Source: Macrostomum lignano
Taxonomy: Eukaryota
DNA length: 64,000 bases
Direction: 5' to 3'
Assembly (NCBI GenBank): GCA_002269645.1
Contig: NIVC01002664.1
Span: forward strand, 1 to 64,000
Position numbers and translations under genes: made by a program. Positions 1-59,400 of the stretch are shown piece by piece. Below the pieces are notes generated by a model. That model worked only from the letters and a program-made list of their open reading frames with translations. It was not told where the DNA came from and searched no databases. Position 1 is the stretch's first letter; each line of letters starts with the position of its first letter.

Positions 1-1645
1 TCTCCTCTCCTCTCCTTCCTCTCTCTCCTCCTCTCCTCCTCTCTCTTCTCTCTCATCTCCACTCTCCTCTCTCTCTCCTCTCCTCCCCTCTCCTCTCCTC
101 TCCTCCTCTCTCCTCTCCTCTCCTCTACTCTCTCTCTCCTCCTCTCATCTCCACTCTCCTCTCCTCTTTCTCTCTCTCCTCTCTCTCCTCCTCTCCTCTT
201 CTTCCTCTCCTCTATCCTCTCCTCTCCTTCTCTCTTCCTCTCCTCTCCTCTCTCCTCTCCTCTCCTCTCATCTCACTCTCCTCTCTCTCTCCTCTCCTCC
301 CCTCTCCTCTCCTCCTCTCTCTCTCTCTCCTCTCCTCTCATCTCCACTCTCCTCTCCTCTTTCTCTCCTCTCCTCTCCTCTCCTTTCCTCTCCTCTCCTC
401 TCCTCTTCTTCCTCTCCTTCCTCTCCTCTCCTCTCCTCTCCTCTCTCTCCTCTTCTCTCCTCTCCTTTCTCTCCTCTCCTTCCTTCCTCTCTCCTCTCTC
501 CCTCTCCCCTCTCCTCTCCTCTCCTCTCCTCTCCTCTTCTTCTCTCCTCTTCCTCTCCTCTCCTCTCCTCTCCTCTCCTCCTCTCCTCTCCTCTTCTCTC
601 CTCTCCTCTATCCTATCCTCTCCTTCCTCTCCTCTCTCTCCTCTCCTCTATCCTCTCCTCTCCTCTTTCTCTCCTCTCCTCTCCTCTCTCCTCTCTCCTC
701 TCCTCTCCTCTCCTCTCCTCTACTCTCCTTCTCTCCTCTCCTCTCCTCTCCTCTTCTCTCCTCTCCTCTATCCTTCCTCTCTCCTCTCCTCTCCTCTCTC
801 TCTCTCTCCTCTCCTCCTCTCCTCTCCTCTCCTCTCCTCTCCTCTTCTCTCATCTCCACTCTCCTCCTCCTCTTTCCTCCCTCTCCTCTCCTCTCCTCTC
901 CTCTCCTCTCTCTCCTCTCCTCTCTCTTCTCTCCTCTCTCTTCCTCTCCTCTTACTCTCCTCTCTCCTCTCCTCTCCTCTCCTCTCCTCTCCTCTCCTCT
1001 CCTCTCCTCTATCTCCTCTCTCCTCTCCTCTCCTCTCCTCTCTCCTCTCTCCTCTCCTCTCCTCTCCTCTCCTCTACTCTCCTCTCTCCTCTACTCTCCT
1101 CTCCTCTCCTCTTCTCTCCTCTCCTCTATCCTCTCCTCTCTCTCTCCTCTCCTCTCTCCTCTCCTTCCTCTCCTCTCTCTCTCCTCTCTCTCCTCTCCTC
1201 TTCTCTCATCTCCACTCTCCTCTCCTCTCTCTCCTCCCCTCTCCTCCTTCCTCTCCTCTCCTCTCCTCTCCTCTCTCTCCTCTCCTCTTCTCTCCTCTCC
1301 TCTATCCTCTCCTCTCCTCTCCTCTCCTCTCCTCTTCCTCTCTCTTCCTCTCTCTCCTCTCCTCTCCTCTCCTCTCCTCTCTCTACTCTCCTCTCCTCTC
1401 CTCTCTCCTCTCCTCTCCTCTCTCCTCTCCTCTCCTCTCCTCTCTCTCTCTCTCTCCTCTCCTCTCCTCTCCTCCTCCTCTCTCTCTCCTCTCTCCTCTC
1501 CTCTCCTCTCCTCTCTCCTCTCTCCTCTCCTCTCCTCTCCTCTCCTCTCCTCTCTCTCCTCTCTCTACTCTCCTCTCTCCTCTCTCTCCTCTCCTCTCCT
1601 CTCCTCTCCTCTCTCCTCTCCTCTCCTCTCTCCTCTCCTCTCCTA
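1..1645. repeat. CT-rich low-complexity microsatellite, degenerate (CTCCT)n
   Basis: Almost pure C/T sequence built from ctcct/ctct units; the 608..859 ORF is an artefact of it. Confidence 0.97.
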
Positions 1646-1899
1646 GCTCTTGATATTCATTAAGATTTTTTAGAATTCTATATTAGAATTCTAAAAACAT
1701 TTCCGTACATTTACGTACATTTCCTGTACCTAAAAATCATAAAAATGCATGGCACGGCTCTAATCTTTGGTTTTATGAATCTATTTTATCATCTCTGTTA
1801 CACATATTGTTACAAAGTCAGCTAAAGAATGACAAAATAGCTTCATAAAACTATAATGAGTCAAGCCGTGCCATTTATGGTTTTCTAGGCACAGGACCT

Positions 1900-2150
1900 A
1901 TGCAGTTGTACGCAGAATAATAAATTAACATAGAATTCAGAACATAGATATGGTATATATATAGGTAGATATATAGATATAGAGGAACATTGGGTCTGCC
2001 TCCTTTCGAAAGGAATTACAAATTTTTGTGCTTAAGAAATGAATGCCTCACATCTACGTAATGTATTTTTTTCGGTAAAACCTTGCATGGCTCCTAAAAA
2101 TTTCCAAGAAACGTAGTTTCCCGTCCGTCTACTTGAGTAGTCCAGTTGGT
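1900..2150. mobile_element. Fragment of a dispersed repeat, probable MITE family, also present at ~26955-27295
   Basis: 1985-2100 resembles 27185-27290 directly (ggtctgcct..aatttttgtgct..aaatgaa). The reverse complement of 2100-2145 matches 26958-27000 (ggactactcaagtaga..gggaaact.cgtttctt). Confidence 0.55.
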
Positions 2151-45804: not shown

Positions 45805-47254
45805 GTGGCTGGTGACTATGGCCAGGTTTAAAGCCATTGAGGAAATATTGAGTATCAGCTTCTGCCTGTCTTTACTGTGTCTTTGTGCCTGTGTGTCTGC
45901 TCTGTCTGTCTGCTCTGTCTGTTAGTTTTCCTGCTGCAAATCTTACTGAAAGTCTGCCATTGTTTCAGAAGATAAAGGATGCGAAAGAAGAGCTAGACAA
46001 GCTTATCCAGCGATTTAGTGTGTTAATATGGCTAGTAGACCTGCCGTCTTTGATGCTTAGTTGAATAAAATGCAAGTATTGACTCCCAGCATCGCCTATT
46101 ATTAGTTAATAAATAATTGTAATTAATTTTTTGCGCTCATAGTTTAATGTGTAGATATAATGAAAAGTTACTTGCTTAGAGACCGTGAGAGACACTGCAT
46201 ATTTCTAATGTCTTCGTTTGAAATTTCAATTTCATTAAATAGTTCATACTTTTAGTAATCAATGCAAATCAGGCACTTATTAGCAAATCCCAGATCCTCA
46301 TAATTCAGCTATTCTAATCCCAGATCCTCATAATTCAGCTATTCAAATCCCAGATCCTCATAATTCAGCTATTCTAATCCCAGATCCTCATAATTCAGCT
46401 ATTCGAATCCCAGATCCTCATAATTCAGCTATTCTAATCCCAGATCCTCATAATTCAGCTATTCAAATCCCAGATCCTCATAATTCAGCTATTCTAATCC
46501 CAGATCCTCATAATTCAGCTATTCAAATCCCAGATCCTCATAATTCAGCTATTCTAATCCCAGATCCTCATAATTCAGCTATTCAAATCCCAGATCCTCA
46601 TAATTTAGCTATTCAAATCCCAGATTCTCATAATTCAGCTATTCAAATCCCAGATCCTCATAATTCAGCTATTCAAATCCCAGATCCTCATAATTCAGCT
46701 ATTCAAATCCCAGATCCTCATAATTTAGCTATTCAAATCCCAGATTCTCATAATTCAGCTATTCAAATCCCAGATCCTCATAATTCAGCTATTCAAATCC
46801 CAGATCCTCATAATTCAGCCATTCAAATCCCAGATCCCCATAATTCAGCTATTTACGCTCGTAAGTCCCAGATCCTCATAACTCAGCTATTCAAATCCCA
46901 GATCCCACAATTCAGCCATTCAAATCCCAGATCCTCATAATTCAGCCATTCAAATCCCAGATCCTCATAATTCAGCTATTCAAATCCCAGATCCCCATAA
47001 TTCAGCTATTCAAATAATGTTCGTCTATTATTCGTCTATGTGCGAAACCATCTGCCCCCGTTTATATATCGACCCCAAACAAGCGACCAAATATATAAAA
47101 AAAATCATTCTCGGCCTAGCACCGATTACTGTGGCTTAATGCCAAGAACATAACATGGCATCGCAAGCAGCGATTTTGATGCACTGATTCATAAGTTGCA
47201 TCCTACACTGCATTCGGACATACGGAACCTGCCGACAGTCCAGAACCAGCTAGA

Positions 47255-48090
47255 ATGGCACCTCCATCTCCAAGTAGGGCTCCGACAATATCGCCATCTC
47301 GAGGGCACAGCAGTACTGCGGTCACAGGAAGCAGAGTCAGCTTGCCGGGCCTGCAGATACCACGCCTCGACCTGGCCACCGACACGGTCGACGAGTTCGA
47401 CGCGTGGAGAGCTACCATCGAGGCATACTTCGAAGCCATGGGAGTGCAAAAGTCCGACGCCGACAGCAATGAAGTGGCCGCGCAAAAGCGAGCAAACCGC
47501 AGAGCTTGCATCCTCAACTCTTTCTCTGCAACCACGTACAACAAGTACAAGAATCTGCCCCTCACAGAGGCTGAATTTCGGGATCCTGAGAAGGTGATCC
47601 AGACACTCCGTGCGCATCTAATCGGGCAAGTAAACATTATTGTTGAGCGAAATCGCTTTTGGACCCGGCAGCAGAAGGAGGGAGAAGCATTTTCTGATTT
47701 TTTGATGGAATTACGAGACCTCATGAGAACTTGTGCGTTTTGTCAGCATGCCGACGATCTATTGAGAGATAAAATTGTCCTGGGAATACGAAACCCGGAC
47801 ACTATTAGCCGAGCCAAAGCTTAGCTTATCAGAAGCGGTAACCATTTGCCAAGCTGAAGAAGCGTCTATCAAACAGCGGGACGAAATTTGCAAGTCAGCG
47901 AGCCTGAATGCGCTAAAAATATCTGCGTACAGGACGACTAAGCACCCGGGATTCCTAAAAGGACAACCCCAGACGAGCAAAAGTCAATCGTGTGGCTACT
48001 GCGGTAAGCAAAAGCACTCGGGTGAGACATGTCCGGCCAGAGACAAAACTTGTCGTCGCTGTGGCAAAAAGGGCACTTCGATAGAGTGTG
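47255..48090 (+). pseudogene. gag: Gypsy gag, broken by two apparent small deletions (~47805 and ~48072)
   Basis: Pieces lie in three frames: ...LLRDKIVLGIRNPDT / LLAEPKLSLSEAVTICQAEE...CGYCGKQKH..TCPARDKTCRRCGKK / GHFDRVCRSK. Confidence 0.8.
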
Positions 48091-51000
48091 CCGCTCGAAA
48101 AATACACTAAGCAAAAAACCCAGTGAATCGTCGCGAAAAGGAAGCATTCAATCGCTAATAGCCATGCTGCAACCTGATTGTCCCGTAGTGAATGTACAAA
48201 TCGGAGGTGTCACACTAACAATGATGCCCGACACTGGCTCAAATATAACCGCTATCAGAGTAGAAGACATGCAAAAGCTGGCAAGGAGGCCACGAATTTT
48301 AGAAGCCGCTGATGGTCCAACAGCCGCGAATGGACAGTACATGAAAGTAATAGGAAAGTTTCGCGACTCAATCTCGATCGGTGAGACCAAGATCACAACA
48401 GACATTTACGTTCTTGATCGCCTGACGGTACCGGTCTTGTCATGGAGAGCATGTGTTGATTTGGGAATAATTCCCAGGTATTTTCCTCGACAACAAATCA
48501 ACTCGATCGCCACAAGAACTGCTACAGCAGAAGACCTAATCAGCGAATTCCCGGCTGTATTCGATGGGATAGTAAGACCAATGAAGGGTGAAGCATTTTC
48601 GATCAAGCTTCGTGAAGACGCTCAACCTTTCTCCATTAAGACACCAAGGAGGATACCGTTCCCATTGTACGAGCGACTTAAAGCTGAGCTGGACTCGTTG
48701 GAAGCTCAGGAAATAATCTGCAAAGTCACTGCTCCTACGCAGTGGTGTGCACCAATAGTGGTGGCGCCAAAGAAAGACAATGGGATACGGATGTGCGTCG
48801 ACTTTCGGGAATTAAACAAATATGTTATTCGACCAAGGTACCAGTCTCAGACGCCATTGGAAGTCGTTGCAAGCACAGATGCTAGTCGCGCCAAGTATTT
48901 CTCTGTAGTTGACGCCTTGAAAGGATACCACCAAATACCGCTGGCTAAAGAAAGTATGCACCTGACAACGTTCATCACGCCGTTTGGTCGTTATATGTTT
49001 AGGATGGCACCATTCGGTATAAGCTCTATTTCTGAGTATTACAACCAGAGACTTGACGACACTTTTCAAGGACTCAAGGAAGTTCGGCATGTCGTTGATG
49101 ACTGTCTGGTCGCAACTTCTGACGAGGAATCACACGTACAAGCGGTTCGTCAGTTTCTGCAGCGCTGTCAAGACAATGGGGTAGCATTAAATAAAAAGAA
49201 GTTTGCATTTTGCAAGACTCAAATTGATTTTGCCGGATTTCGATTGTCAGCTGATGGCTACAGCATTGATCCGGAGCTTATGAAAGCGGTCAGAAAATTT
49301 CCCACTCCAAACAATATTACCGACCTACGCGCGTTCTTTGGCCTAGTCAACCAAGTCGGCACGTTTACGTCAGACATAGCAGAAGTCACAGCCTCGTTAA
49401 GGCCGCTGCTGTCCGAGAAGAATTTATTTCAATGGGGAGACGAACATCAAACGGCATTTGAAGAAGCCCGTCGCCGCCTGGCAATTGCTCCTACACTGGC
49501 CTATTATGACCAACGCAAGCCAACAGCCCTGCACACGGATGCATCTCGACTTAAGGGAATCGGATTCTTGCTCAAACAGCAGCAGACCGATGGAAGCTGG
49601 CGTGTGGTTCAAGCTGGCTCGAGATTCATTTCAGAGACCGAGTCACGCTATGCCATGATCGAGTTGGAACTGTTAGCTGTGGTCTGGGCGACTCAGAAGT
49701 GCAGACTCTTCCTTGAGGGGCTTCATGAGTTTGAAATTGTAACCGACCACAAGCCGCTGATACCAATCCTGAACAGTTACCAGCTGGATCAAATAGAAAA
49801 TCCCAGAATTCAGCGTCTTCGAGCGAAACTGAACCGCTACGTATACAAGGCGCGATGGGTAAAAGGCAAGGACAATGCCGACGCAGACGCTCTGTCGCGA
49901 GCACCAGTGGACAATCCGACTGCACAGGATGAACTGGGCGAGTCTGCAGATTTTCAACTTACCAATCAGCTCTTAATGCACCTCGAATCAGCAGAGCTGG
50001 ATCCTATTCTGCAAAGCGTGCGACAAAGCACAGCTTCTGATCAGGAGTTGCAAGACCTGATGCAATATATTCGGGATGGCTTTCCCAATGACAAGGCAAA
50101 CTTACCTCTTTGCATTCGGTCATTTTGGCATGTAAGAGACAAGCTCTCAGTCGACGACGGCATCATTCTATGCGGATGTCGTTGCGTCATACTACATGCA
50201 ATGAGGAAGCAGATTTTGACGGACTTACACGCAAGTCACCAAGGTCTGCACAAGACAAAGCAGAGAGCAAGGATGGTCGTCTACTGGCCTGGCATCGATC
50301 GGGACATTGAAAGTACAGTCAAGCAGTGTCAGTCCTGTCGGGAACATCTACCATCGCAGATCAGGGAGCCGATGACAACCCAGGACCAACCGGATCGATG
50401 TTTTCAACACATACATGCAGATTTCTGCGAGCATGCCGGCAAGAAGTTCCTTGTGCTCGTGGATGCATACTCAGGCTGGCCAGCGTTCTGTCATTTCGGT
50501 GATCGAGCACCCACGTACAAGCTGATAAACGCTTGCCGCGAATTCTTTTGCCAAACAGCTGTACCGGAGAAATTCTGTGCAGACTGTGGGCCACAATTTA
50601 AAGCACAGCCGTTCGTTAATTTTTTACGTCGCTGGGGTGTGAACATCAAATACTCATCTCCGTATTACCATCAAAGCAATGGAAGAGCAGAAGCTGCCGT
50701 GAAAAGTATAAAGAAGATCGTTCGAGGAGCATGGGACAGTCGCTTGAATGACTTGGACAAAGACAAGATGGCTCAGGGTTTGCTGCAGCTGCGAAACACG
50801 CCCATGTACGATGGCAGAATTCCATCTGTAATGGTCTATGGACACACAGTCAGAGACACGCTGCCCGCGCATAGGAAAAGTTTTGCAAAGGAATGGAAGG
50901 ACAAGGTCTGGAAAATGGAGGAAAAAGCTGCAGAAATTCACGCTAAAGTTCATCAACACTACAATGCTTCGAAGCGACAACTGGAACCTCTCCGAGTCGG

Positions 51001-51316
51001 CAGTCACGTTGTTCTTCAAAACCCTGTCACAAAGCTTTGGGACAAGAAGGGCGTCGTAGTAGAAGTTGGTCGGCACCAGGACTATATGGTCAAGTTAGTA
51101 AGCGGCCGAATTTTCCGTCGCAATCGTGTGTACATCCGCCGATGTCTACCACAAGAACAGCTCTCTACTACTGGTGCATCTCAGAAGGAAGGTGAAGCAC
51201 AGGACGCCCCGGACAAGCCAAAGACCGCACAGCCAAGGCGAAGTCAACGGTCGAACAAGGGAGTCCCGGCACCCAAGTTGCATTACAGGAAGTTGGGTGA
51301 ACCAGTTAACGCTTAA
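48029..51316 (+). CDS. pol: Gypsy pol (aspartic protease, RT, RNase H, integrase)
   Basis: DTGS; DALKGYHQ and VVDD; TDAS and TDHKPL; HHCC zinc finger (H.SH..YWPGI..C..C); integrase HADF, ADCGPQF, SNGRAEAAVK. Uninterrupted 1095-aa ORF. Confidence 0.95.
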   Translation: MSGQRQNLSSLWQKGHFDRVCRSKNTLSKKPSESSRKGSIQSLIAMLQPDCPVVNVQIGGVTLTMMPDTGSNITAIRVEDMQKLARRPRILEAADGPTAANGQYMKVIGKFRDSISIGETKITTDIYVLDRLTVPVLSWRACVDLGIIPRYFPRQQINSIATRTATAEDLISEFPAVFDGIVRPMKGEAFSIKLREDAQPFSIKTPRRIPFPLYERLKAELDSLEAQEIICKVTAPTQWCAPIVVAPKKDNGIRMCVDFRELNKYVIRPRYQSQTPLEVVASTDASRAKYFSVVDALKGYHQIPLAKESMHLTTFITPFGRYMFRMAPFGISSISEYYNQRLDDTFQGLKEVRHVVDDCLVATSDEESHVQAVRQFLQRCQDNGVALNKKKFAFCKTQIDFAGFRLSADGYSIDPELMKAVRKFPTPNNITDLRAFFGLVNQVGTFTSDIAEVTASLRPLLSEKNLFQWGDEHQTAFEEARRRLAIAPTLAYYDQRKPTALHTDASRLKGIGFLLKQQQTDGSWRVVQAGSRFISETESRYAMIELELLAVVWATQKCRLFLEGLHEFEIVTDHKPLIPILNSYQLDQIENPRIQRLRAKLNRYVYKARWVKGKDNADADALSRAPVDNPTAQDELGESADFQLTNQLLMHLESAELDPILQSVRQSTASDQELQDLMQYIRDGFPNDKANLPLCIRSFWHVRDKLSVDDGIILCGCRCVILHAMRKQILTDLHASHQGLHKTKQRARMVVYWPGIDRDIESTVKQCQSCREHLPSQIREPMTTQDQPDRCFQHIHADFCEHAGKKFLVLVDAYSGWPAFCHFGDRAPTYKLINACREFFCQTAVPEKFCADCGPQFKAQPFVNFLRRWGVNIKYSSPYYHQSNGRAEAAVKSIKKIVRGAWDSRLNDLDKDKMAQGLLQLRNTPMYDGRIPSVMVYGHTVRDTLPAHRKSFAKEWKDKVWKMEEKAAEIHAKVHQHYNASKRQLEPLRVGSHVVLQNPVTKLWDKKGVVVEVGRHQDYMVKLVSGRIFRRNRVYIRRCLPQEQLSTTGASQKEGEAQDAPDKPKTAQPRRSQRSNKGVPAPKLHYRKLGEPVNA

Positions 51317-51595
51317 AAGGGGAGATGAGGAAGAAAGAACTGTAAAACTGTTTTGCTTAAAAGGGGAGATGTTGTGTGCGTATGCGAATATTCGTCTATG
51401 TGCGAAACCATCTGCCCCCGTTTATATATCGACCCCAAACAAGCGACCAAATATATAAAAAAAATCATTCTCGGCCTAGCACCGATTACTGTGGCTTAAT
51501 GCCAAGAACATAACACAAATCCCAGATTCTCACAATTCAGCCATTCAAATCCCAGATCCTCATAATTCAGCTGAACTCCCAATTCCCCTTTCCAG

Positions 51596-52156
51596 GCGAC
51601 TGCAGCTGTCCGGTCTCTGCTGCTCCTGTGCCTGCTGCTCCCAGCCAGCAGCTCGGCCGAGCAGAAGAAGCCGCTGTCCGAGTACTCTGACGCAGACTTG
51701 GAGCGACTCTACAAGCAGTGGGAAGAAAGCGATCCGGACTCGGAGCCCGAGAGCACCAGCTGGAAGAGCCCACAGTTGGATCTGACCAAGGTGCCGGATT
51801 TGACAGATCCCACACTAATCCTGCAGAACTCCAGCCGTGGCCAGCCGGTGCCTCTGATTGTCCGCATCGCTGGAGCCGAGGGTCGCGACTCCGTATGGCT
51901 GGAGAATCTGTCGCGCAACTGGCAGCTGGAGATGTTCAACGCTCACATGGAGACAACTAGGCGAGTTGTAGAAGACGGCACGGTGCAACTGATCGCTCTT
52001 GATGGCTCTCAGGTGGTGAAAGTGCGCGAATATTTGCTAGCCCAGCCTAACTGTTATTCTGTCACTATCGAGGGTCACACTGTACTCGGTAGGGGCGCTC
52101 CAGCTGCTGAAGTGGCCGCTGCTGCCGCTGCTAAAGCCAAAAAGACTGAACTATGA
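51596..52156 (+). CDS. MESD: LRP chaperone MESD (Boca); single exon lacking its own ATG
   Basis: After acceptor cccctttccag|: ATAAVRSLLLLCLLLPASSSA (signal peptide), KKPLSEYSDADLERLYKQWEE, WQLEMFNAH, DGSQVVKVREYLLAQPNCYSVTIEG, and a C-terminal KTEL ER-retention signal. Confidence 0.9.
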   Translation, partial: ATAAVRSLLLLCLLLPASSSAEQKKPLSEYSDADLERLYKQWEESDPDSEPESTSWKSPQLDLTKVPDLTDPTLILQNSSRGQPVPLIVRIAGAEGRDSVWLENLSRNWQLEMFNAHMETTRRVVEDGTVQLIALDGSQVVKVREYLLAQPNCYSVTIEGHTVLGRGAPAAEVAAAAAAKAKKTEL

Positions 52157-52344: not shown

Positions 52345-52738
52345 ATAAAGTACATTCAGGTCTGTCCCCTCCTGAATGTACATTTACACCTCTACCCCCT
52401 CCAGGGTGTACATTCACAGCTCTACCCCTCAGAGTGTACATTTACATCTCTACCCTCTCCCAGAGTGTACATTCACAGCTCTACCCTCTCCCAGAGTGTA
52501 CATTTACAGCTCTACCCTCTCCCAGAGTGTACATTCACAGCTCTACCCTCTCCCAGAGTGTACATTTACAGCTCTACCCCCCAGAGTGTACATTCACAGC
52601 TCTACCCTCTCCCAGAGTGTACATTTACAGCTCTACCCCCTCCAGAGTGTACATTTACAGCTCTACCCTCTCCCAGAGTGTACATTTACAGCTCTACCCC
52701 CTCCAAAGTGTACATTCACAGCTCTACCCTCCAGTGTA
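52345..52738. repeat. ~30-bp minisatellite (cagagtgtacatttacagctctaccctctcc)
   Basis: Direct tandem copies. Confidence 0.93.
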
Positions 52739-53333: not shown

Positions 53334-53409
53334 TTAACTTGGCCTTGGCTTTACTTTATTGTACAGCACAATCTTCTTGTCTGCATAGCGGCTGCGGGAG
53401 GGTCGCTGC

Positions 53410-53441
<32 letters not shown>

Positions 53442-56400
53442 GAGCCGCTTGATTTCTGCCAACTGTTTGGGCGACAGTTTGGCCTCCCGTTCGGCGACAC
53501 GCTGTGCCACCGATTCCGTCAGCTCTTTGAGCTCCGGGAAGTCGTCGAGATTGTCGATTAGCGGGATCAGCAGTGGCTCGATGCTTGGGTGCTTGCTGGC
53601 TGGAATTGGGCGATGCAGGTGAATTGAGACTGCATTCTTGATGGGCCGAGTGATAGACGGGAATGTACACTCGATTGGGATAGAGAGGCTGTATGTACAT
53701 TCTTGATAGGTGGAGTGGTGATAGTGAAACTGTACACTCGATTGGGATAGAGAGGCTGTGTGTACATTCTTGATAGGCGGAGTGGTAGAGGGGATTGTAA
53801 TATTCCTGCACGAAAACGAGACGCACGAGTTTGCGTGTAGGAAAATCATTGTCTTTTGACCATAGACAAAGTCATTCCTGCACGGTTTTCGAGAAACGTT
53901 AAGAAGAGATGAAAATTGAGTGGAGAGTTTATAGAAAAGTGTATAAAGCTTATTGACTATGGCGTCTGTAATCGACTCGGCTCTGAATCCTCCATTAATT
54001 GATTTTCGCTATGCTACGGTGTCTGGATTAATTGGCGACGAAATGTTTATTGAAAGTGTGTCCAGCAACTTTGAGAGGACGGGCGACGATTTGACTCCAC
54101 TGATAGCGGATTGCACGTTCAGCGAGGAATTAGAGAAACTTTTCAGCTCGGATCCGGAAACCTTGTGTAACCTTGACGAATTGGAAAGTCTGGCCGCTCA
54201 ACTGGAACGCGACAACGAATGTCATTCGACTGTCTCTAAGGATAAAGCTGTGATCAACCGCTTGACGGCCTGGTTGGCGGAGAATAATTTAAAAGTGGAT
54301 TACGCGACTGCTTCGGTGGAAGAAATTGCCAAATGGGTCCGCTACTTCTATGCGACTCTGCGTAAGTCAGACGGCAGCTTCTATTCGCCGAATACAATCG
54401 TAGGAATTCGAGCCGCACTGTTCAGGTACTTTATGAAATTACGTGGCCTCAATATCATCGCTCACGAGGCTTTTCATAGCGCGAATTTGATGGTGAAGAA
54501 TGTTTGCAATGCGTATTTGAAGTCCGGTGGTCGAGTGCAGCATTACGAAGCCATTGAGTCGGACGACCTTGTCAAGCTTGCTTCTTACTTCGACAGAAGC
54601 ACTCCAACACGTTTGCAAGAAGAGGTATATTTCAATGTGTTATTTTATTTCGGCAATCGCGGCAGAGAATGGCTACGAGGTCTCACTGTTCGTTCATTCC
54701 GAGAGAAGGCCCTATCAAACGGAGCTATGGCGATCGAGTTGCAAGGCAGCACCTCAAAGAATGTAAAAGGCTCGAGTGACATGCGACTCTGCGACGACAA
54801 TAAACAGGCCTTGATGGTGGCCAAGCCGGAGTCAAGGCACTGTCCAGTTCAGGCCTTCCAGCTTTATTTGTCGAAAATTACTGCCGTGCCGGGTTGGAAT
54901 CAGGAGGACTTCTTTCTGCGTCCGAAACCACGAGTGAATGCGGATGGCATCTGGTACACCAAAGTACCAGTTGGAATCAACACTTTGGGGCCGTTGCTCA
55001 AGAAGATCTCTTCGAATGCTAACCTGTCCAAGCTGTACACTCCGCATTGTGTGCGACCTACAGTTGTTACGGAGCTGCATGAAGCTGGCTTTTCTGTCGA
55101 AAAAATTGCGAAGGTGACAGGTCACAAGGTGAGCAATTCTTTATTCTTAGTAAGTTTATTGACACATGGACAAGGAATTTATTAAACACCACCTCTATTC
55201 ACAGAATAGCGCGTCGGTAGAACGATACATCTGGAGAGGCAAGAAGAGGGACTCGATCATGGCAGGGATGAGTGATCAGCTGACAGTCGCTCTAGCTGGA
55301 ACTATGCCGGCACCAAGTTCTACATTGAGCGAAGCTCCTGCAAGGGCTGTTACAACTACCGACCCGTGCGCCCTGAGCGACGCTCCTACAAGGGCTGTTG
55401 CGACTACCGACCCGTGCGGATCAGCGTCAATGTCAACTTTCAAGAAGTCACTGGTTGTTGAAGAATCGACCACCACACTTGTAGCAGCCCCCACTAAGCG
55501 GATGAAGATTTTGGCAAACGGCGAAACGAATGTTGTGCAGTTTATTTTCGAGTAAATGCCGAGAGGGGTGTGAGTAGGTCTATAGACTCATTAACTGTTT
55601 CCCTAGTTCCACTTATTATCCTTTTTGTTCTTCCATATTGTTATTGATTACATATTAAGTTGCTTCTAAAAATAAATTGTTAAATCGTGCAGGAATGAAG
55701 TCATTCCTGCACGATAAGCTAACGTATGTCAAGTGATTTCTACCATAGACACAGACATTCCTGCACGATAATAAATCGAAAAAAATCATTCCTGCACGCT
55801 GTGGTCAAACGACAATGTACACTCGATTGGGATAGAAAGGCTGTATGTACATTCTTGATAGGCGGAGTGATAGAGGGGATTGTACACTCGATTGGGATAG
55901 AAAGGCTGTATGTACATTCTTGATAGGCGGAGTGGTGATTGTGAGACTGTATACTCGATTGGGATAGAGAGGCTGTATGTACATTCTCGATAGGCGGAGT
56001 GGTAGATATCTCTAGGCGGAGTGGTAAATATCTCTAGGCGAGATATGTACACTGTAGTACATGTAGGAGGATAATTAAAAACTTTAAGGAACAAAATACA
56101 GTGTACATTGTTTTTATCGATGCAGGCAGTGGTGAGCACTATAGGGTTCTGATGCTCCCGGTTCTAGGAAATATTGATTTTTTATTCTTATCAATTCGAA
56201 TGAGATCATTCTTTGATTAAGCGTTTAAGACTTCCGGGAAGTGAACTACAATTAATCAATCTATGAAAGCTTTTGAACTCCCACCCTTCCTACAATAGTT
56301 TAAATGAAATTAAAAGATACAAAGTACTATAGTTATCCAATAAACCTAATTGGAATTGAAAAAAACATTAGAAGCGCTTTTCACTGTAAAGACTTTTATA

Positions 56401-59400
56401 ATACAAATGATATTCCTGTTGTTGAGTAGTTAATCAGATATATTAAGGAATTTTCCATTTTACTGTACGACCTCCTCTTGTAAGCAATTTAATCAAATCT
56501 GAAGTTAATCCGGCTTTACGTTGAAGAACAATTTGGAAATTAAAATAACTGCGTCTTGCAATAAAGCGTGATAGCAGTTCAAAATGTATTCGAGTGCACT
56601 GCAGACAGTCATTTTAACACATTTCTCATTCACAGATTTAGACCTTATCTACAGATTTCACATCTACAGATTTCTTATCTGCAGATTTCTCATCTACAGA
56701 TTTCTCATCTACAGATTTCTCATCTAAAGATTTCTCATTCACACATTTCTCATCTACAGATTTCTCATCTACAGATTTCTCATTCACACATTTCTCATCT
56801 ACAGATTTCTCATCTACAGATTTCTCATTCACACATTTCTCATCTACAGATTTCTCATCTACAGATTTCTCATTCACACATTTCTCATCTACAGATTTCT
56901 CATTCACACATTTCTCATCTACAGATTTCTCTCCCAGAGATTTGCAATTCCTGCTCACCTTGCAATTTGCACAGAACGACAACATCCCGACTGCCAATCT
57001 GATCCGATAGCGATTCGTGATCCTGCAGCTCGGGCAGCTTGAGCAGTTGGCCACCCACTGTGCTGAGCTCGATGACAGCTGGAGTAGGAAAGTTTTTATA
57101 GATTTTTAGTATGTAGCCAGGCTCTTAAAATTGTGGAAATCCTAGATATTTTTATTGTGAAATGCCTGACAGGAAGCTTAGCAAGTTTCAGTGGGAGATT
57201 TTTTCCAATCTGACAAATAGTTCGCAGCAGGAGGCAAAAAAACACGATTACAGCATTTTTCCCATGAACTTATCTCAACAGAATTTTTTCACGCTTGTAG
57301 CTGCTACAATCACATGTAAGCAATACAGACAACTCATCATCTGTGAGTTCGCTGCGTACGAGTACTCGTATACGCAGTAGTGTTATATTTCCACCGAGTT
57401 CCTCCGGGAGAACTGTAGCATCCAGCTAGCTAGCTGGTTATGACACCAACACTGCCAACCAACATGCTTGACCTGTCACTACACGTATTGGAAATTTCAC
57501 CCTACGTCAGTTGCTTACCGGGCTAAAAATAAATAGAATTGAGGCTTTTTAACGAAACAGATGAGTGAAAAGCAAACCCCAGCAAAATGTTTTTACAGGG
57601 CACAAAAGATCTGCTTTGACTCTTTGGACTTTTAATGTATTGAAAACTAAAAGGGTTACGCAGGATTCTGTTGAGGCACGCAGGGGTCGGAAAAAAGATT
57701 GTGGGGAGAGCCAATCAAAGCCACGTACTTTGCACGCAGAGGACGGAAAACAGGAGGTTAGCGAGAGCCAATCAAAAGCCACACATTTCACACGCAGAGG
57801 GACGGAAAACAGGTTGCGGGGAGAGCCAACCAAAAGCCACGTACTTCGCACGCAGGGGATGGAAAACAGGGGGTTGGCGAGAGCCAACCAAAAGCCACGT
57901 TACTTCGCACGCAGGGGATGGAAAACACGGGGTTGGTGAGTGAGAGCCAACCAAAAGCCACGCACTTTGCACGCAGGGGACGGAAAACAGGAGGTTAGCG
58001 AGAGCCAATCAAAAGCCACACATTTCACACGCAGAGGGACGGAAAACAGGTTGCGGGGAGAGCCAACCAAAAGCCACGTACTTCGCACGCAGGGGATGGA
58101 AAACACGGGGTTGGTGAGTGAGAGCCAACCAAAAGCCACGCACTTCGCACGCAGGGGATGGAAAACAGGGGGTTGGCGAGAGCCAACCAAAAGCCACGTT
58201 ACTTCGCACGCAGGGGATGGAAAACACGGGGTTGGTGAGTGAGAGCCAACCAAAAGCCACGCACTTCGCACGCAGGGGATGGAAAACACGGGGTTGGTGA
58301 GTGAGAGCCAACCAAAAGCCACGCACTTCGCCCGCAGGGGATGGAAAACACGGGGTTGGTGAGTGAGAGCCAACCAAAAGCCACACACTTCGCACGCAGA
58401 GGGACGGAAAACACGGGGTTGATGAGTGAGAGCCAACCAAAAGCCACGTACTTCGCACGCAGGGGACGTAAAACAGGGGGTTGGTGAGTGAGAGCCAACC
58501 AAAAGCCACGCACTTCGCACGCAGGGGACGGAAAACAGGGTGTTAGCGAGAGCCAACCAAAAAGCCACGTTACTTCGCACGCAGGGGATGGAAAACAGGG
58601 GGTTGGTAAGTGAGAGCCAACCAAAAGCCGCGTACTTCGCACGCAGGGGACGGAAAACAGGGGGTTGGTGAGTGAGAGCCAACCAAAAGCCACGTACTTC
58701 GCACGCAGGGGACGGAAAACAGGGAGTTGGTAAGTGAGAGCCAACCAAAAGCCACGTACTTCGCACGCAGGGGATGGAAAACACGGGGTTGGTGAGTGAG
58801 AGCCAACCAAAAGCCACACACTTCGCACTTAGGGGGTGGGGCGGAAAACAGGGGGACAGAAGGATTGACCCGATCTCAAATCTTAAGAGTACGTTCGTAT
58901 AACCATTCCAGTCTACATGTAGATAGCTCTATCTAGTTTATGCAACGTAAGAAACATCTCATAGATTTTAAAACCAATATAAATCTGTTGAGAGCTCACT
59001 ATTTTGATCGAGTTTGCAGCTACGCCTGATTGCGCTGATCAGATGCTCTTTCTGGCACGTGATGTTGAACAGGGCTGTCTTATTGTCTGAAATAAGTAAT
59101 TTTAATTGGTAAAGTGAAATATTTTTTGAATCCGAAAAAATTCAATCAGGTATCATTTTCCCTTAGAGTTAGGTCTGCACATGTATAATACAGCAAACTG
59201 AAAATCTATATGCATTGTATTATCCGTCTAGCCTAAATCTATGCTTAAAATATTCAATTGTCTCCGAAGCATTGGGCAGTTCTCGTATTACAAACCTAAG
59301 AGGCTTTGCAGCCTAATGCATCAGTTGCAGTGGGGGAGCATAGGGAGAGAAAGAGAGTAGAAGAAGAGCATTCAGAACCCAAAGTCGTACCTGAAGTCAG

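What the first reader, a model, noticed from the sequence alone, without database searches (positions are those of the whole stretch)
53796..55819. Complete, potentially active Crypton (tyrosine-recombinase transposon) with readable ends
Seen: a ~2-kb unit carrying a 2-exon YR with all expected catalytic residues (R in NRGRE, K in SKN, HxxR in HCVR, H in TGHK, Y in VERY) and no stops once the 76-nt intron is removed. It interrupts a 65-bp minisatellite, so the empty site can be rebuilt (ggggat-TGTA-cactcg), and TGTA is present at both junctions. Known: Cryptons lack TIRs/LTRs, have short terminal direct repeats, often contain introns, and gave rise to the ZMYM/QRICH1/KCTD1 DUF3504 domains; intact animal copies with defined ends are uncommon. 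Inference: an autonomous family that excises as a circle, and a candidate compact eukaryotic site-specific integrase.
Basis: partly seen in the sequence, partly recalled or inferred. Interest (0 to 1): 0.85.

Follow-up and report, generated by a model that had tools for sequence, protein, structure and literature searches.

The report
Young flatworm Crypton transposon copy
This is one nearly intact copy of a young, multi-copy "Crypton" jumping gene of the flatworm Macrostomum lignano. It moves with a Cre-like tyrosine recombinase and inserts at short SANTG sites. It is an ordinary kind of element, but its ends are unusually well defined and it sits in a lab-tractable animal.

Summary
Window 53796-55819 is a 2.02-kb unit that splits a 65-bp minisatellite in register. 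It carries a two-exon, 506-aa tyrosine recombinase (YR) with all catalytic residues.

The window is Macrostomum lignano contig NIVC01002664.1. The protein is annotated as BOX15_Mlig005367g13. I read copies of the element on nine other contigs (97.6-99.6% identical). Together with the window they give eight independent insertion sites with unrelated flanks. All copies have the same right end (...GGTCAAACGACAATG), and seven of the eight sites keep the same left end (TGTAATATTCC...).

Three points need correcting:
- The bases shared by both junctions are TG, not TGTA. The target motif is SANTG, and the element's own right end is CAATG.
- This copy lacks 55 bp of a conserved left arm and has five private amino-acid changes, including R400W. 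It is near-complete, not pristine.
- The sister contig carries the same insertion, so I found no empty allele.

New anatomy: six copies of a 12-mer (CATTCCTGCACG) near the ends, and an inverted copy of the right terminus inside the left arm. There is also a ~265-bp non-autonomous derivative, a head-to-tail junction (gacaaTGtaatatt), and an intronless sister family with the same layout.

Verdict: a new member of the known CryptonA kind. It is a low-specificity transposon, not a site-specific integrase.

The parts
53633..53795 (.). Left part of the interrupted 65-bp minisatellite (target DNA). It lies in an intron of a minus-strand host gene whose last coding exon is at about 53334-53600.
   Evidence: TRF. 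The gene call 53334..>60156 (-) is listed.
53793..53797 (+). Left junction pentamer GATTG. This is the target-side SANTG, and its TG (53796-53797) is the dinucleotide shared with the right junction.
   Evidence: Junction table of 10 independent sites: A at -2 in 10/10, C/G at -3 in 9/10, TG in 10/10.
53796..53817 (+). Left terminus TGTAATATTCCTGCACGAAAAC. It is the same in seven of the eight independent family-1 sites read (all but the 5'-truncated L013 copy) and in the L007 copy of the mini element (the nested L002/L003 mini copy begins TGATATATTCC).
53796..55817 (+). The Crypton copy, 2,022 bp if both TGs are counted. The element proper is 53798-55817 or 53796-55815, depending on which TG is assigned to it.
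   Evidence: Homology to L001, L005, L006, L007, L002/3, L012 and L013 stops at these ends, and the flanks are unrelated.
53818..53819 (+). Point where 55 bp of the left arm are missing compared with copy L001 and with family 2. The missing stretch is a CACGAGTGC-repeat module. Other copies lack 17, 27 or 41 bp here.
   Evidence: Left-arm alignment. The first 100 bp are 88/99 identical between the two families.
53802..53812 (+). Subterminal motif copy 1 (ATTCCTGCACG), starting 6 bp into the element (4 bp after the junction TG).
   Evidence: 6 exact copies inside the element, and none elsewhere in the 64 kb. With one mismatch allowed, 8 matches are found where 0.93 are expected.
53847..53861 (-). 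Inverted copy (14/15) of the right terminal 15-mer GGTCAAACGACAATG. Its CATTG is the site where the mini element is inserted in copies L002/L003.
   Evidence: Family 2 has a perfect 17-nt equivalent (I1).
53860..53884 (+). CCATAGACA box plus motif copy 2 (CATTCCTGCACG), just upstream of the ORF.
   Evidence: the repeat finder D1. The same composite box is in family 2 (D4).
53959..55128 (+). Exon 1 of the tyrosine recombinase (aa 1-390). It holds the N-terminal core-binding domain and the catalytic residues R234, E237, K267, H363, R366 and H389.
55129..55204 (+). 76-nt GT..AG intron between the catalytic His389 and Tyr398. Without splicing the product is 408 aa and lacks the Tyr.
   Evidence: The intron is invariant in 7 copies, the RNA-seq-guided annotation uses it, and family 2 has no intron.
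55205..55555 (+). Exon 2 (aa 391-506 plus stop). It holds Y398, a disordered tail with a 48-bp coding tandem duplication (55326-55418), and a conserved C-terminal beta-hairpin.
55671..55676 (+). AATAAA polyadenylation signal, about 115 nt after the stop codon.
55684..55715 (.). Palindromic pair of the motif: 15-nt arms with a 2-nt gap. Read another way, it is two inverted 11-mers (55686-55696 and 55703-55713) around a 6-bp spacer, which is a lox/FRT-like geometry.
   Evidence: the repeat finder I2.
55743..55798 (+). CCATAGACA box plus motif copy 5 (55757-55767), and motif copy 6 (55788-55798). The start-to-start spacings of 54 and 31 bp match the 55 and 31 bp of family 2.
   Evidence: D1 in all three regions.
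55803..55817 (+). Right terminus GGTCAAACGACAATG. It ends in the donor pentamer CAATG, whose TG is 55816-55817.
   Evidence: Identical in all 9 other copies read.
55818..56006 (.). Right part of the interrupted minisatellite.
   Evidence: TRF.

Best explanation
Window 53796-55817 is one copy of a young, autonomous CryptonA-type DNA transposon of Macrostomum lignano. The only gene it carries is a two-domain, Cre-like tyrosine recombinase.

**Proposed mechanism.**
- The recombinase binds the repeated CATTCCTGCACG boxes in both subterminal regions.
- It pairs the two ends and recombines them at the shared TG. This releases a circle whose junction reads ...GGTCAAACGACAA-TG-TAATATTCCTGCACG... and leaves one TG at the donor site.
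- The circle then recombines with a chromosomal site that resembles the element's own right end (donor CAATG, target SANTG).

**This copy.** It landed in a 65-bp minisatellite inside an intron of a minus-strand host gene, before the two sister contigs diverged. It keeps an intact, spliceable ORF. It has lost 55 bp of the conserved left arm and carries five private amino-acid changes, so it may be a weaker substrate or source than copy L001.

**Shown versus inferred.**
- Shown: the identity of the protein, the exact ends, multiple unrelated insertion sites, the TG/SANTG rule, two reconstructable empty sites, a non-autonomous derivative, a head-to-tail junction, and a neutral decay pattern among copies.
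- Inferred: binding of the boxes, the circular intermediate, the position of strand cleavage, and present-day activity.
For: **Protein.**
- Pfam DUF3504 plus Phage_integrase, both above their cut-offs.
- Catalytic residues conserved across 25 homologues and aligned to XerA and Tn1549 Int.
- The AlphaFold model (core pLDDT about 90) best matches Cre over about 335-354 columns, with target-normalised TM 0.68-0.73 and E about 1e-9.

**Mobility.**
- Copies L001, L002/3, L005, L006, L007, L012 and L013 are 97.6-99.5% identical and their flanks are unrelated. All end with GACAATG, and all except the 5'-truncated L013 start with TGTAATATTCC.
- The 90% protein cluster has 14 members, and gene names run up to g20.
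- Private codon changes against the consensus are 26 nonsynonymous to 10 synonymous, which is the neutral post-insertion decay expected of a transposon.

**Ends and target.**
- TG stands at both junctions of every insertion. There is A at -2 in 10/10 sites and C/G at -3 in 9/10.
- Empty site 1 is rebuilt from the minisatellite.
- Empty site 2: the mini element is inserted at catTGtctt in the left arm of L002/3, and the same site is unoccupied in the window and the other copies.
- In L007 the autonomous copy is followed head-to-tail by a ~265-bp mini element, and the two share a single TG.

**Cis elements.**
- Six exact ATTCCTGCACG copies lie inside the element.
- Family 2, whose protein is 53-58% identical, has the same layout and spacing with a co-varied motif, CAATCCTGCACG. 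It also has its own inverted copy of its right terminus.
- The first 100 bp of the left arm are 89% identical between the families, while the coding DNA is about 55-65% identical.

**Expression.** The GenBank model with exactly this splice comes from an RNA-seq-guided assembly (PMC5730564).

**Precedent.** The active CryptonF-1_cRei of Chlamydomonas ends in CACCG and targets CAYCG (PMC9977147).
Against: - No empty allele was found. The only sister contig I could fetch (L009) has the same insertion.
- No circle, excision footprint or de novo insertion has been observed.
- A 2-bp region of obligatory identity is much shorter than the 6-8 bp overlap of well-studied tyrosine recombinases, so where the strands are cut is unknown.
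- The window copy has a 55-bp left-arm deletion and R400W next to the catalytic Tyr.
- RNA-seq reads cannot be assigned to one copy when copies are about 99% identical.
- Placement inside CryptonA rests on the DUF3504 match, not on a tree with reference Cryptons.
Confidence: 0.85

Rival explanations
1. It is a domesticated, host-maintained DUF3504 gene family (like ZMYM, QRICH1 or KCTD1) that was duplicated with the neopolyploid genome. On this view it is not a mobile element.
For: The Mlig_3_7 assembly is highly redundant. The window copy and L009 are one such duplicated pair with the same insertion, and so are L002 and L003. The genes passed the annotators' repeat filter.
Against: Eight independent sites have unrelated flanks that start exactly at the same two end sequences. 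Private changes are neutral, 26 N to 10 S. All catalytic residues are kept. A 265-bp non-coding derivative with the same ends exists. There are nested and tandem insertions.
Confidence: 0.03
2. It is a Crypton family that is now extinct. The copies, this one included, are recent fossils that can no longer move, because of lost cis sequence, silencing, or a crippled recombinase.
For: Every family-1 copy but L001 has a different deletion in the conserved left arm. The window copy has five private substitutions, including R400W. Four copies have damaged ORFs: L007, L009, L012 and L013. The window insertion predates the split of two contigs that differ by about 1%.
Against: Five independent copies keep the full 506-aa ORF and the intron. 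L001 differs from the consensus by one codon and has the full left arm. Copies differ by only 0.5-2.4%. Transcript-based gene models exist.
Confidence: 0.3
3. The element is moved by something other than its own recombinase. One option is a host or other-transposon nuclease that makes a 2-bp TG target-site duplication. Another is that it is only a fragment of a larger tyrosine-recombinase element such as a DIRS/Ngaro retroelement or a giant cargo element.
For: A 2-bp repeat looks more like a staggered-cut duplication or a serine-recombinase crossover than a classical tyrosine-recombinase overlap. LTR retrotransposons are abundant nearby.
Against: The 2.02 kb contain no RT, RNase H, DDE or serine-recombinase ORF. 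The flanks diverge immediately outside the ends in all copies. There are no terminal inverted repeats at the tips. The target resembles the element's own right end, SANTG against CAATG. That is the signature of conservative site-specific recombination seen for an experimentally active Crypton.
Confidence: 0.04

Closest known systems
CryptonA elements of animals (Kojima & Jurka 2011, PMC3212892), for example CryptonA-1_OL of medaka with its non-autonomous derivatives
   Same: About 2 kb with a single tyrosine-recombinase ORF that matches DUF3504. No GCR1_C or other Pfam C-terminal domain was detected. No TIRs or LTRs. Introns can be present. Short non-autonomous derivatives share both ends with the autonomous element.
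   Different: That survey found no terminal repeats of any kind in animal Cryptons, and its six animal phyla did not include Platyhelminthes. Here a TG / SANTG junction rule, arrays of a 12-mer near both ends, and an internal inverted copy of the right terminus can all be read. I could not build a tree with Repbase reference sequences.
[quoted passage not shown]
   Same: The element ends in a 5-bp motif (CACCG) and inserts at a near-identical target (CAYCG), with one degenerate position. Here the donor is CAATG and the target is SANTG. Both fit Goodwin's donor-terminus/target recombination model.
   Different: It belongs to another Crypton group (CryptonF), which per Kojima & Jurka carries a GCR1_C DNA-binding domain. 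Its host is an alga. Its activity was shown directly in mutation-accumulation lines, whereas here activity is only inferred.
Glomhoppers, DUF3504-encoding CryptonA elements of Glomeromycota (PMC13465315)
   Same: A DUF3504-type recombinase with the full catalytic set and a Cre-like predicted fold. Both intron-containing and intronless forms exist.
   Different: The hosts are fungi. Several repeat-finding tools were applied there, but the passages I read do not describe a junction rule. Here the boundaries are exact to the base.
Cre recombinase of phage P1 (PDB 1nzb, 5u91, ...)
   Same: It is the best structural match over both domains. The spacing of the catalytic residues is the same: H to H/W is 26 residues and H/W to Y is 9 (the Cre residue numbers are from my own knowledge).
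   Different: Sequence identity is 13-16%. Cre acts on a symmetric 34-bp site with an 8-bp overlap. This element has asymmetric ends, only 2 bp of obligatory identity, and about 10 dispersed target sites.
Domesticated DUF3504 proteins (QRICH1, PDB 9hjt; ZMYM2-4; KCTD1)
   Same: Homologous domain: PDB sequence hit with E 0.006, and fold-search hit at rank 30.
   Different: According to PMC3212892, those proteins have lost the catalytic tetrad and are conserved host genes, some present as a few paralogues. This protein keeps every catalytic residue and is multi-copy with transposon-like ends.

Membership tests
Crypton (DNA transposons that encode only a tyrosine recombinase) | Encodes a tyrosine recombinase with the catalytic R..K..HxxR..H/W..Y set | tested here: met
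   R234 (and R236), E237, K267, H363, R366, H389 and Y398. Pfam PF00589 is above its cut-off. The residues are conserved in 25 homologues and aligned to XerA and Tn1549 Int. The fold is Cre-like.
Crypton (DNA transposons that encode only a tyrosine recombinase) | No reverse transcriptase, RNase H or other transposition gene. This separates it from DIRS, Ngaro, PAT and VIPER. | tested here: met
   The element is 2.02 kb between exact ends. Apart from the two reading frames that make up the recombinase gene, the other ORFs of at least 40 aa within it are short (97 aa or less) and overlap that gene in other frames or on the other strand.
Crypton (DNA transposons that encode only a tyrosine recombinase) | No terminal inverted repeats or LTRs at the tips | tested here: met
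   The tips TGTAATATTCC... and ...AACGACAATG are neither inverted nor long direct repeats. Caveat: an inverted copy of the right terminal 15-mer lies 51 bp inside the left end.
Crypton (DNA transposons that encode only a tyrosine recombinase) | Short direct repeat at the two junctions that serves as the recombination substrate (4-6 bp in fungal and stramenopile Cryptons) | tested here: inconclusive
   A perfect repeat exists but is only 2 bp (TG). Read as 5 bp it is imperfect: target SANTG against donor CAATG. This fits the model but is shorter and more degenerate than the textbook case.
Crypton (DNA transposons that encode only a tyrosine recombinase) | Multiple copies at unrelated sites with identical ends (evidence of transposition) | tested here: met
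   Eight independent sites on ten contigs, plus two insertions of a mini derivative.
Crypton (DNA transposons that encode only a tyrosine recombinase) | Excision as an extrachromosomal circle and reintegration | not testable with these tools
   The only indirect support is one head-to-tail junction with the predicted circle-junction sequence (L007).
CryptonA group | The recombinase matches the DUF3504 profile, which DIRS and Ngaro recombinases do not (per PMC3212892), and there is no C-terminal GCR1_C domain | tested here: met
   PF12012 at E 8.4e-10, 39.4 bits against a 29.7 cut-off. There is no GCR1_C hit. Sources name cluster members 'ZMYM2-like/QRICH1 C-terminal domain-containing'.
CryptonA group | Phylogenetic placement among reference CryptonA sequences (Repbase) | not tested
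Domesticated DUF3504 host genes (ZMYM / QRICH1 / KCTD1 type) | A conserved host gene at a syntenic position, with an incomplete catalytic tetrad, evolving under purifying selection | tested here: not met
   The family is multi-copy with unrelated flanks, keeps the full catalytic set, and shows 26 N to 10 S private changes.
DIRS / Ngaro tyrosine-recombinase retrotransposons | RT/RNase H ORF, with split direct repeats or inverted terminal repeats plus an internal complementary region | tested here: not met
   There is no RT ORF and no such terminal structure.

The most novel reading that the evidence does not exclude
This animal Crypton may not use a classical 6-8-bp overlap at all. All ten sites keep target sequence right up to TG on one side and right after TG on the other. 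That pattern suggests either a crossover confined to about 2 bp, or a single-strand exchange whose Holliday junction is resolved by replication, as happens with CTX phage or integron attC sites. The second option would also explain the copy-number gain seen for active Cryptons.

Three further ideas fit the anatomy:
- The conserved 12-mer arrays act as arm-type sites that assemble the synapse.
- The 100-bp left arm shared by two families whose proteins are only 55% identical lets them cross-mobilise each other and the 265-bp mini element.
- The intron between the catalytic His and Tyr could act as a splicing switch. Without splicing, the product is a 408-aa protein that binds DNA but lacks the Tyr, and it could act as a repressor.
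Probability: 0.15. Interest if true: 0.65.

Novelty: new member of a known kind. Interest (0 to 1): 0.42.

Why it matters
Cryptons are among the least understood DNA transposon groups of eukaryotes. Transposition was first seen directly only in 2023, in an alga. For animal Cryptons the founding survey could find no terminal repeats at all.

This family offers several things together:
- base-exact ends
- a simple target rule (SANTG against the donor CAATG)
- candidate recombinase-binding boxes that co-vary between two sister families
- a 265-bp mini element that would serve as a ready-made donor substrate
- near-consensus copies in Macrostomum lignano, an animal with routine microinjection transgenesis

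That combination makes the mechanism of animal Cryptons testable, including their circle, their crossover and their copy-number gain. These elements are the ancestors of the DUF3504 domain in ZMYM2-4, QRICH1 and KCTD1.

As a tool it would be a small eukaryotic integrase with low target specificity, not a site-specific one.

It also corrects the genome annotation. The roughly 20 'hypothetical protein' genes named Mlig005367, and the Mlig018289 set, are transposon genes.

Tried and rejected
1. **TGTA as the terminal repeat.** Rejected, because six other full copies share only TG.

2. **Looking for an empty allele.**
   - A protein search with the host gene's last exon found nothing.
   - An exact look-up of the neighbouring Mesd protein returned only the window's own contig.
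   - A homologue search found the sister contig NIVC01002104.1. That contig carries the same insertion with the same 55-bp arm deletion, so it is a shared, older insertion and not an empty site.

3. **A second recombinase copy in the window.** There is none. The family-2 copy P0045 lies on the same contig beyond position 64000.

4. **Further mini elements or end sequences in the 64 kb.** None were found.

5. **Terminal inverted repeats at the tips.** None. There is only an internal inverted copy of the right terminus.

6. **Sequence searches of the PDB.** These gave only weak C-terminal hits. The fold search was needed to show the two-domain Cre-like architecture.

7. **Heteroduplex test for a 5-7-bp overlap that includes SAN.** Such an overlap predicts that the right terminus or the left junction would sometimes carry the partner's bases. 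All right termini are CAATG, and 5 of 7 left junctions are clearly target-type. I therefore place both exchanges at or next to TG, with low certainty.

8. **The palindromic motif pair at 55684-55715 as the true crossover site.** Rejected, because the copy boundaries are not there.
Full report
**1. What is in the sequence**

- The window is positions 1-64000 of Macrostomum lignano contig NIVC01002664.1 (assembly GCA_002269645.1). A locus fetched from that record is 100% identical to it.
- At 53796-55819 there is a 2.02-kb insert. It contains one ORF in two exons, 53959-55128 and 55205-55555, separated by a 76-nt GT..AG intron.
- The spliced product is 506 aa and is identical to GenBank PAA56097.1, BOX15_Mlig005367g13.
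- The insert splits a minisatellite. When the flanks are joined with a single TG kept, TRF reports one continuous array of 5.4 copies of a 65-bp unit (score 532). The join falls exactly in register at a unit boundary.

**2. The protein**

- Pfam gives DUF3504 (E 8.4e-10) and Phage_integrase (E 1.8e-7), both above their curated cut-offs.
- In an alignment with 24 homologues of 29-55% identity, R234, G235, R236, E237, K267, H363 and R366 are invariant. T387, G388, H389 and K390 are nearly invariant.
- The C-terminal HxxR...H...Y block aligns residue for residue with the catalytic block of XerA and of Tn1549 Int.
- An AlphaFold model (mean pLDDT 73.8; residues about 72-420 mostly above 85) best matches Cre-DNA complexes across both domains. 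The target-normalised TM-score is 0.68-0.73 and E is about 1e-9. QRICH1, XerA, the integron integrase and Tn1549 Int rank lower.
- The family is very large. A profile of the alignment finds 18,051 representative clusters at E <= 1e-3 and 1,648 at E <= 1e-30.

**3. It is a mobile, multi-copy element with exact ends**

- The 90%-identity protein cluster has 14 members, all but one unnamed Logan fragment from M. lignano. Gene names run up to Mlig005367g20.
- I fetched nine further contigs carrying copies. With the window they give eight independent insertion sites, because L002/L003 and window/L009 are duplicated or allelic pairs.
- The copies are 97.6-99.6% identical to the window copy or to L001.
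- Seven of the eight independent sites begin TGTAATATTCCTGCACGAAAACG (the exception is the 5'-truncated L013). All ten contigs end GGTCAAACGACAATG. The sequence outside these ends is unrelated from site to site.
- Five independent copies keep the whole 506-aa frame and the intron.
- Against the seven-copy consensus, private codon changes are 26 nonsynonymous to 10 synonymous. That is about the neutral ratio, as expected for transposon copies decaying after insertion and not for a host gene family.

**4. The junction rule**

- Only TG is common to both junctions.
- I compared ten independent sites: seven for family 1, one nested mini-element site, and two for family 2. The base two positions before TG is A in 10/10. 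The base three positions before is C or G in 9/10.
- The target is therefore SANTG. The element's own right end is CAATG in family 1 and GAATG in family 2.
- This is the pattern of Goodwin's Crypton model. It is also what was seen for the experimentally active CryptonF-1_cRei, which ends in CACCG and targets CAYCG (PMC9977147).
- Kojima and Jurka reported no terminal repeats in animal Cryptons (PMC3212892). A 2-bp or degenerate 5-bp repeat would be easy to miss.

**5.

- **Repeated 12-mer.** The motif (C)ATTCCTGCACG occurs six times exactly, all inside the element: two near the left end and four near the right end. One of the right-hand copies is inverted, so that 55684-55715 is a perfect palindrome. 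With one mismatch allowed, 0.93 matches are expected in the 64 kb and 8 are found.
- **Inverted right terminus.** The right terminal 15-mer has an inverted copy (14/15) at 53847-53861, 51 bp inside the left end.
- **Mini element, tandem.** In L007 the autonomous copy is followed directly by a ~265-bp element that begins TGTAATATTCCTGCACG and ends CAGCCGACAATG.
- **Mini element, nested.** In L002/L003 the same mini element sits inside the left arm of the autonomous copy, at catTGtctttt, with TG on both sides. The unoccupied version of that site is present in the window and all other copies, so this is a second filled/empty pair.
- **Sister family.** A second family (Mlig018289; protein 53-58% identical; loci L010 and L011) has no intron. 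Its layout is the same:
  - It starts TGTTAGG... and ends ...AATAAGAATG.
  - Its co-varied motif is CAATCCTGCACG. One copy stands before the ATG behind a CCATAGACA box, and three stand at the 3' end with spacings of 55 and 31 bp (54 and 31 bp in family 1).
  - It has a perfect 17-nt inverted copy of its own right terminus inside its left arm.
- **Conserved left arm.** The first 100 bp of the left arm are 88/99 identical between the two families, although the coding DNA is only about 55-65% identical. Conserved position with changed sequence argues that these are functional cis sites. The most likely role is recombinase binding, but that is an inference.

**6. State of this particular copy**

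- Compared with L001 and with family 2, the window copy lacks 55 bp of the conserved left arm, between 53818 and 53819. Other copies lack 17, 27 or 41 bp in the same CACGAGTGC-repeat stretch.
- It carries five private amino-acid changes: S25I, A47P, E95D, R400W and V469F. R400W lies two residues after the catalytic Tyr.
- L001 has the full arm and only one private change, so it is the better candidate for an active copy.
- The sister contig NIVC01002104.1 (L009) has about 99% substitution identity in the flanks. It carries the same insertion with the same arm deletion. The insertion therefore predates the split of these two haplotypes or homeologues, and no empty allele was found.
- The L009 reading frame is broken by a 1-bp deletion, giving 489 aa.

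**7. Expression**

- The GenBank gene models of this assembly come from an RNA-seq-guided transcriptome (StringTie/TACO). Transcripts that overlapped annotated repeats were removed (PMC5730564).
- A transcript model with exactly this splice therefore exists, and the family was not recognised as a repeat by that pipeline.
- Which copy is transcribed cannot be told. Without splicing, translation ends after 408 aa, before Tyr398.

**8. Mechanism**

- The best-supported reading is conservative site-specific recombination by the element's own recombinase between the two TG-containing junctions. This would give a circle that reintegrates at SANTG sites.
- Target-derived bases run right up to TG on the left and start right after TG on the right in every copy. 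Both strand exchanges therefore seem to lie at or next to TG.
- That is unusual for a tyrosine recombinase. It leaves room for a one-strand-exchange, replication-resolved pathway, which is speculative.
- The insertion sites are diverse, so this is a transposon of low target specificity and not a site-specific integrase.

**9. Comparison and novelty**

- By the defining features, this is a Crypton of the DUF3504/CryptonA kind. It encodes only a tyrosine recombinase, has no RT, TIR or LTR, has short junction repeats, and is multi-copy.
- No paper in the searchable library links Cryptons with Macrostomum beyond one incidental mention. Platyhelminthes was not among the phyla listed in 2011.
- I rate it a new member of a known kind, with better-resolved ends and cis architecture than is usual for animal Cryptons.
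- Interest is moderate. There is nothing categorically new, but this is a good experimental entry point in a transgenesis-capable animal.

Noticed in passing
window 47029-51515: A very young LTR retrotransposon. Its two 127-bp LTRs are 100% identical (47029-47155 and 51389-51515). It has an intact 1,095-aa pol ORF (48029-51316) with protease, RT, RNase H and integrase domains. It is inserted in a 30-bp tandem repeat and is absent from the sister contig L009, so it is a presence/absence polymorphism between haplotypes or homeologues.
   Followed up: partly
L007 4859-5123, and L002/L003 about 2672-2893: A ~265-bp non-autonomous (MITE-like) derivative of the Crypton. It has the same tips and several copies of the 12-mer motif. 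It appears once in tandem behind an autonomous copy and once nested in the left arm of another copy.
   Followed up: partly
L010 2786-4702 and L011 (contigs NIVC01004419.1 and NIVC01002067.1); a further copy (P0045) lies on the window's own contig beyond position 64000: A second, intronless Crypton family (Mlig018289; 501-502 aa; 53-58% identical). It has the same end architecture, a co-varied 12-mer, and a left-terminal 100 bp that is 89% identical to family 1. This suggests shared cis requirements, or exchange of ends between the families.
   Followed up: partly
L002 2495-2671: The left arm of the L002/L003 copy contains the normal left end followed, about 85 bp later, by an inverted copy of the same left end. 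This is a fold-back rearrangement, and the nested mini element comes after it.
   Followed up: no
window 55326-55418: A 48-bp tandem duplication (1.9 copies, 91% matches) inside exon 2. It encodes a repeated SEAPARAVTTTDPCAL / SDAPTRAVATTDPCG stretch in the disordered C-terminal tail of the recombinase.
   Followed up: no
window 55468-55555 (aa 490-505): The last ~16 residues (KILANGETNVVQFIFE) are predicted as a confident beta-hairpin. They are conserved in family 2 and in some distant homologues (P0010, P0023), although the ~60-residue tail before them is disordered. This may be a small C-terminal module of unknown role.
   Followed up: no
window 1-2000: An extremely strand-biased CT-rich low-complexity tract at the start of the contig (GC skew -0.89, AT skew -0.69), made of degenerate (CT)n/(CCT)n-like repeats.
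   Followed up: no
window 52377-52731, 56647-56931, 57676-58840: Several other minisatellites lie within 4 kb of the insertion, with periods of 31/61 bp, 15 bp and 58/116 bp. Their copy numbers differ between the window and the sister contig L009.
   Followed up: no
window 51617-52156 (+) and 53334-53600 (-): Neighbouring host genes. One is a Mesd-domain chaperone gene 1.6 kb upstream. The other is a minus-strand gene with a poly-Q C-terminal exon, and one of its introns contains the minisatellite and the Crypton. A protein search with that exon found no homologue.
   Followed up: partly
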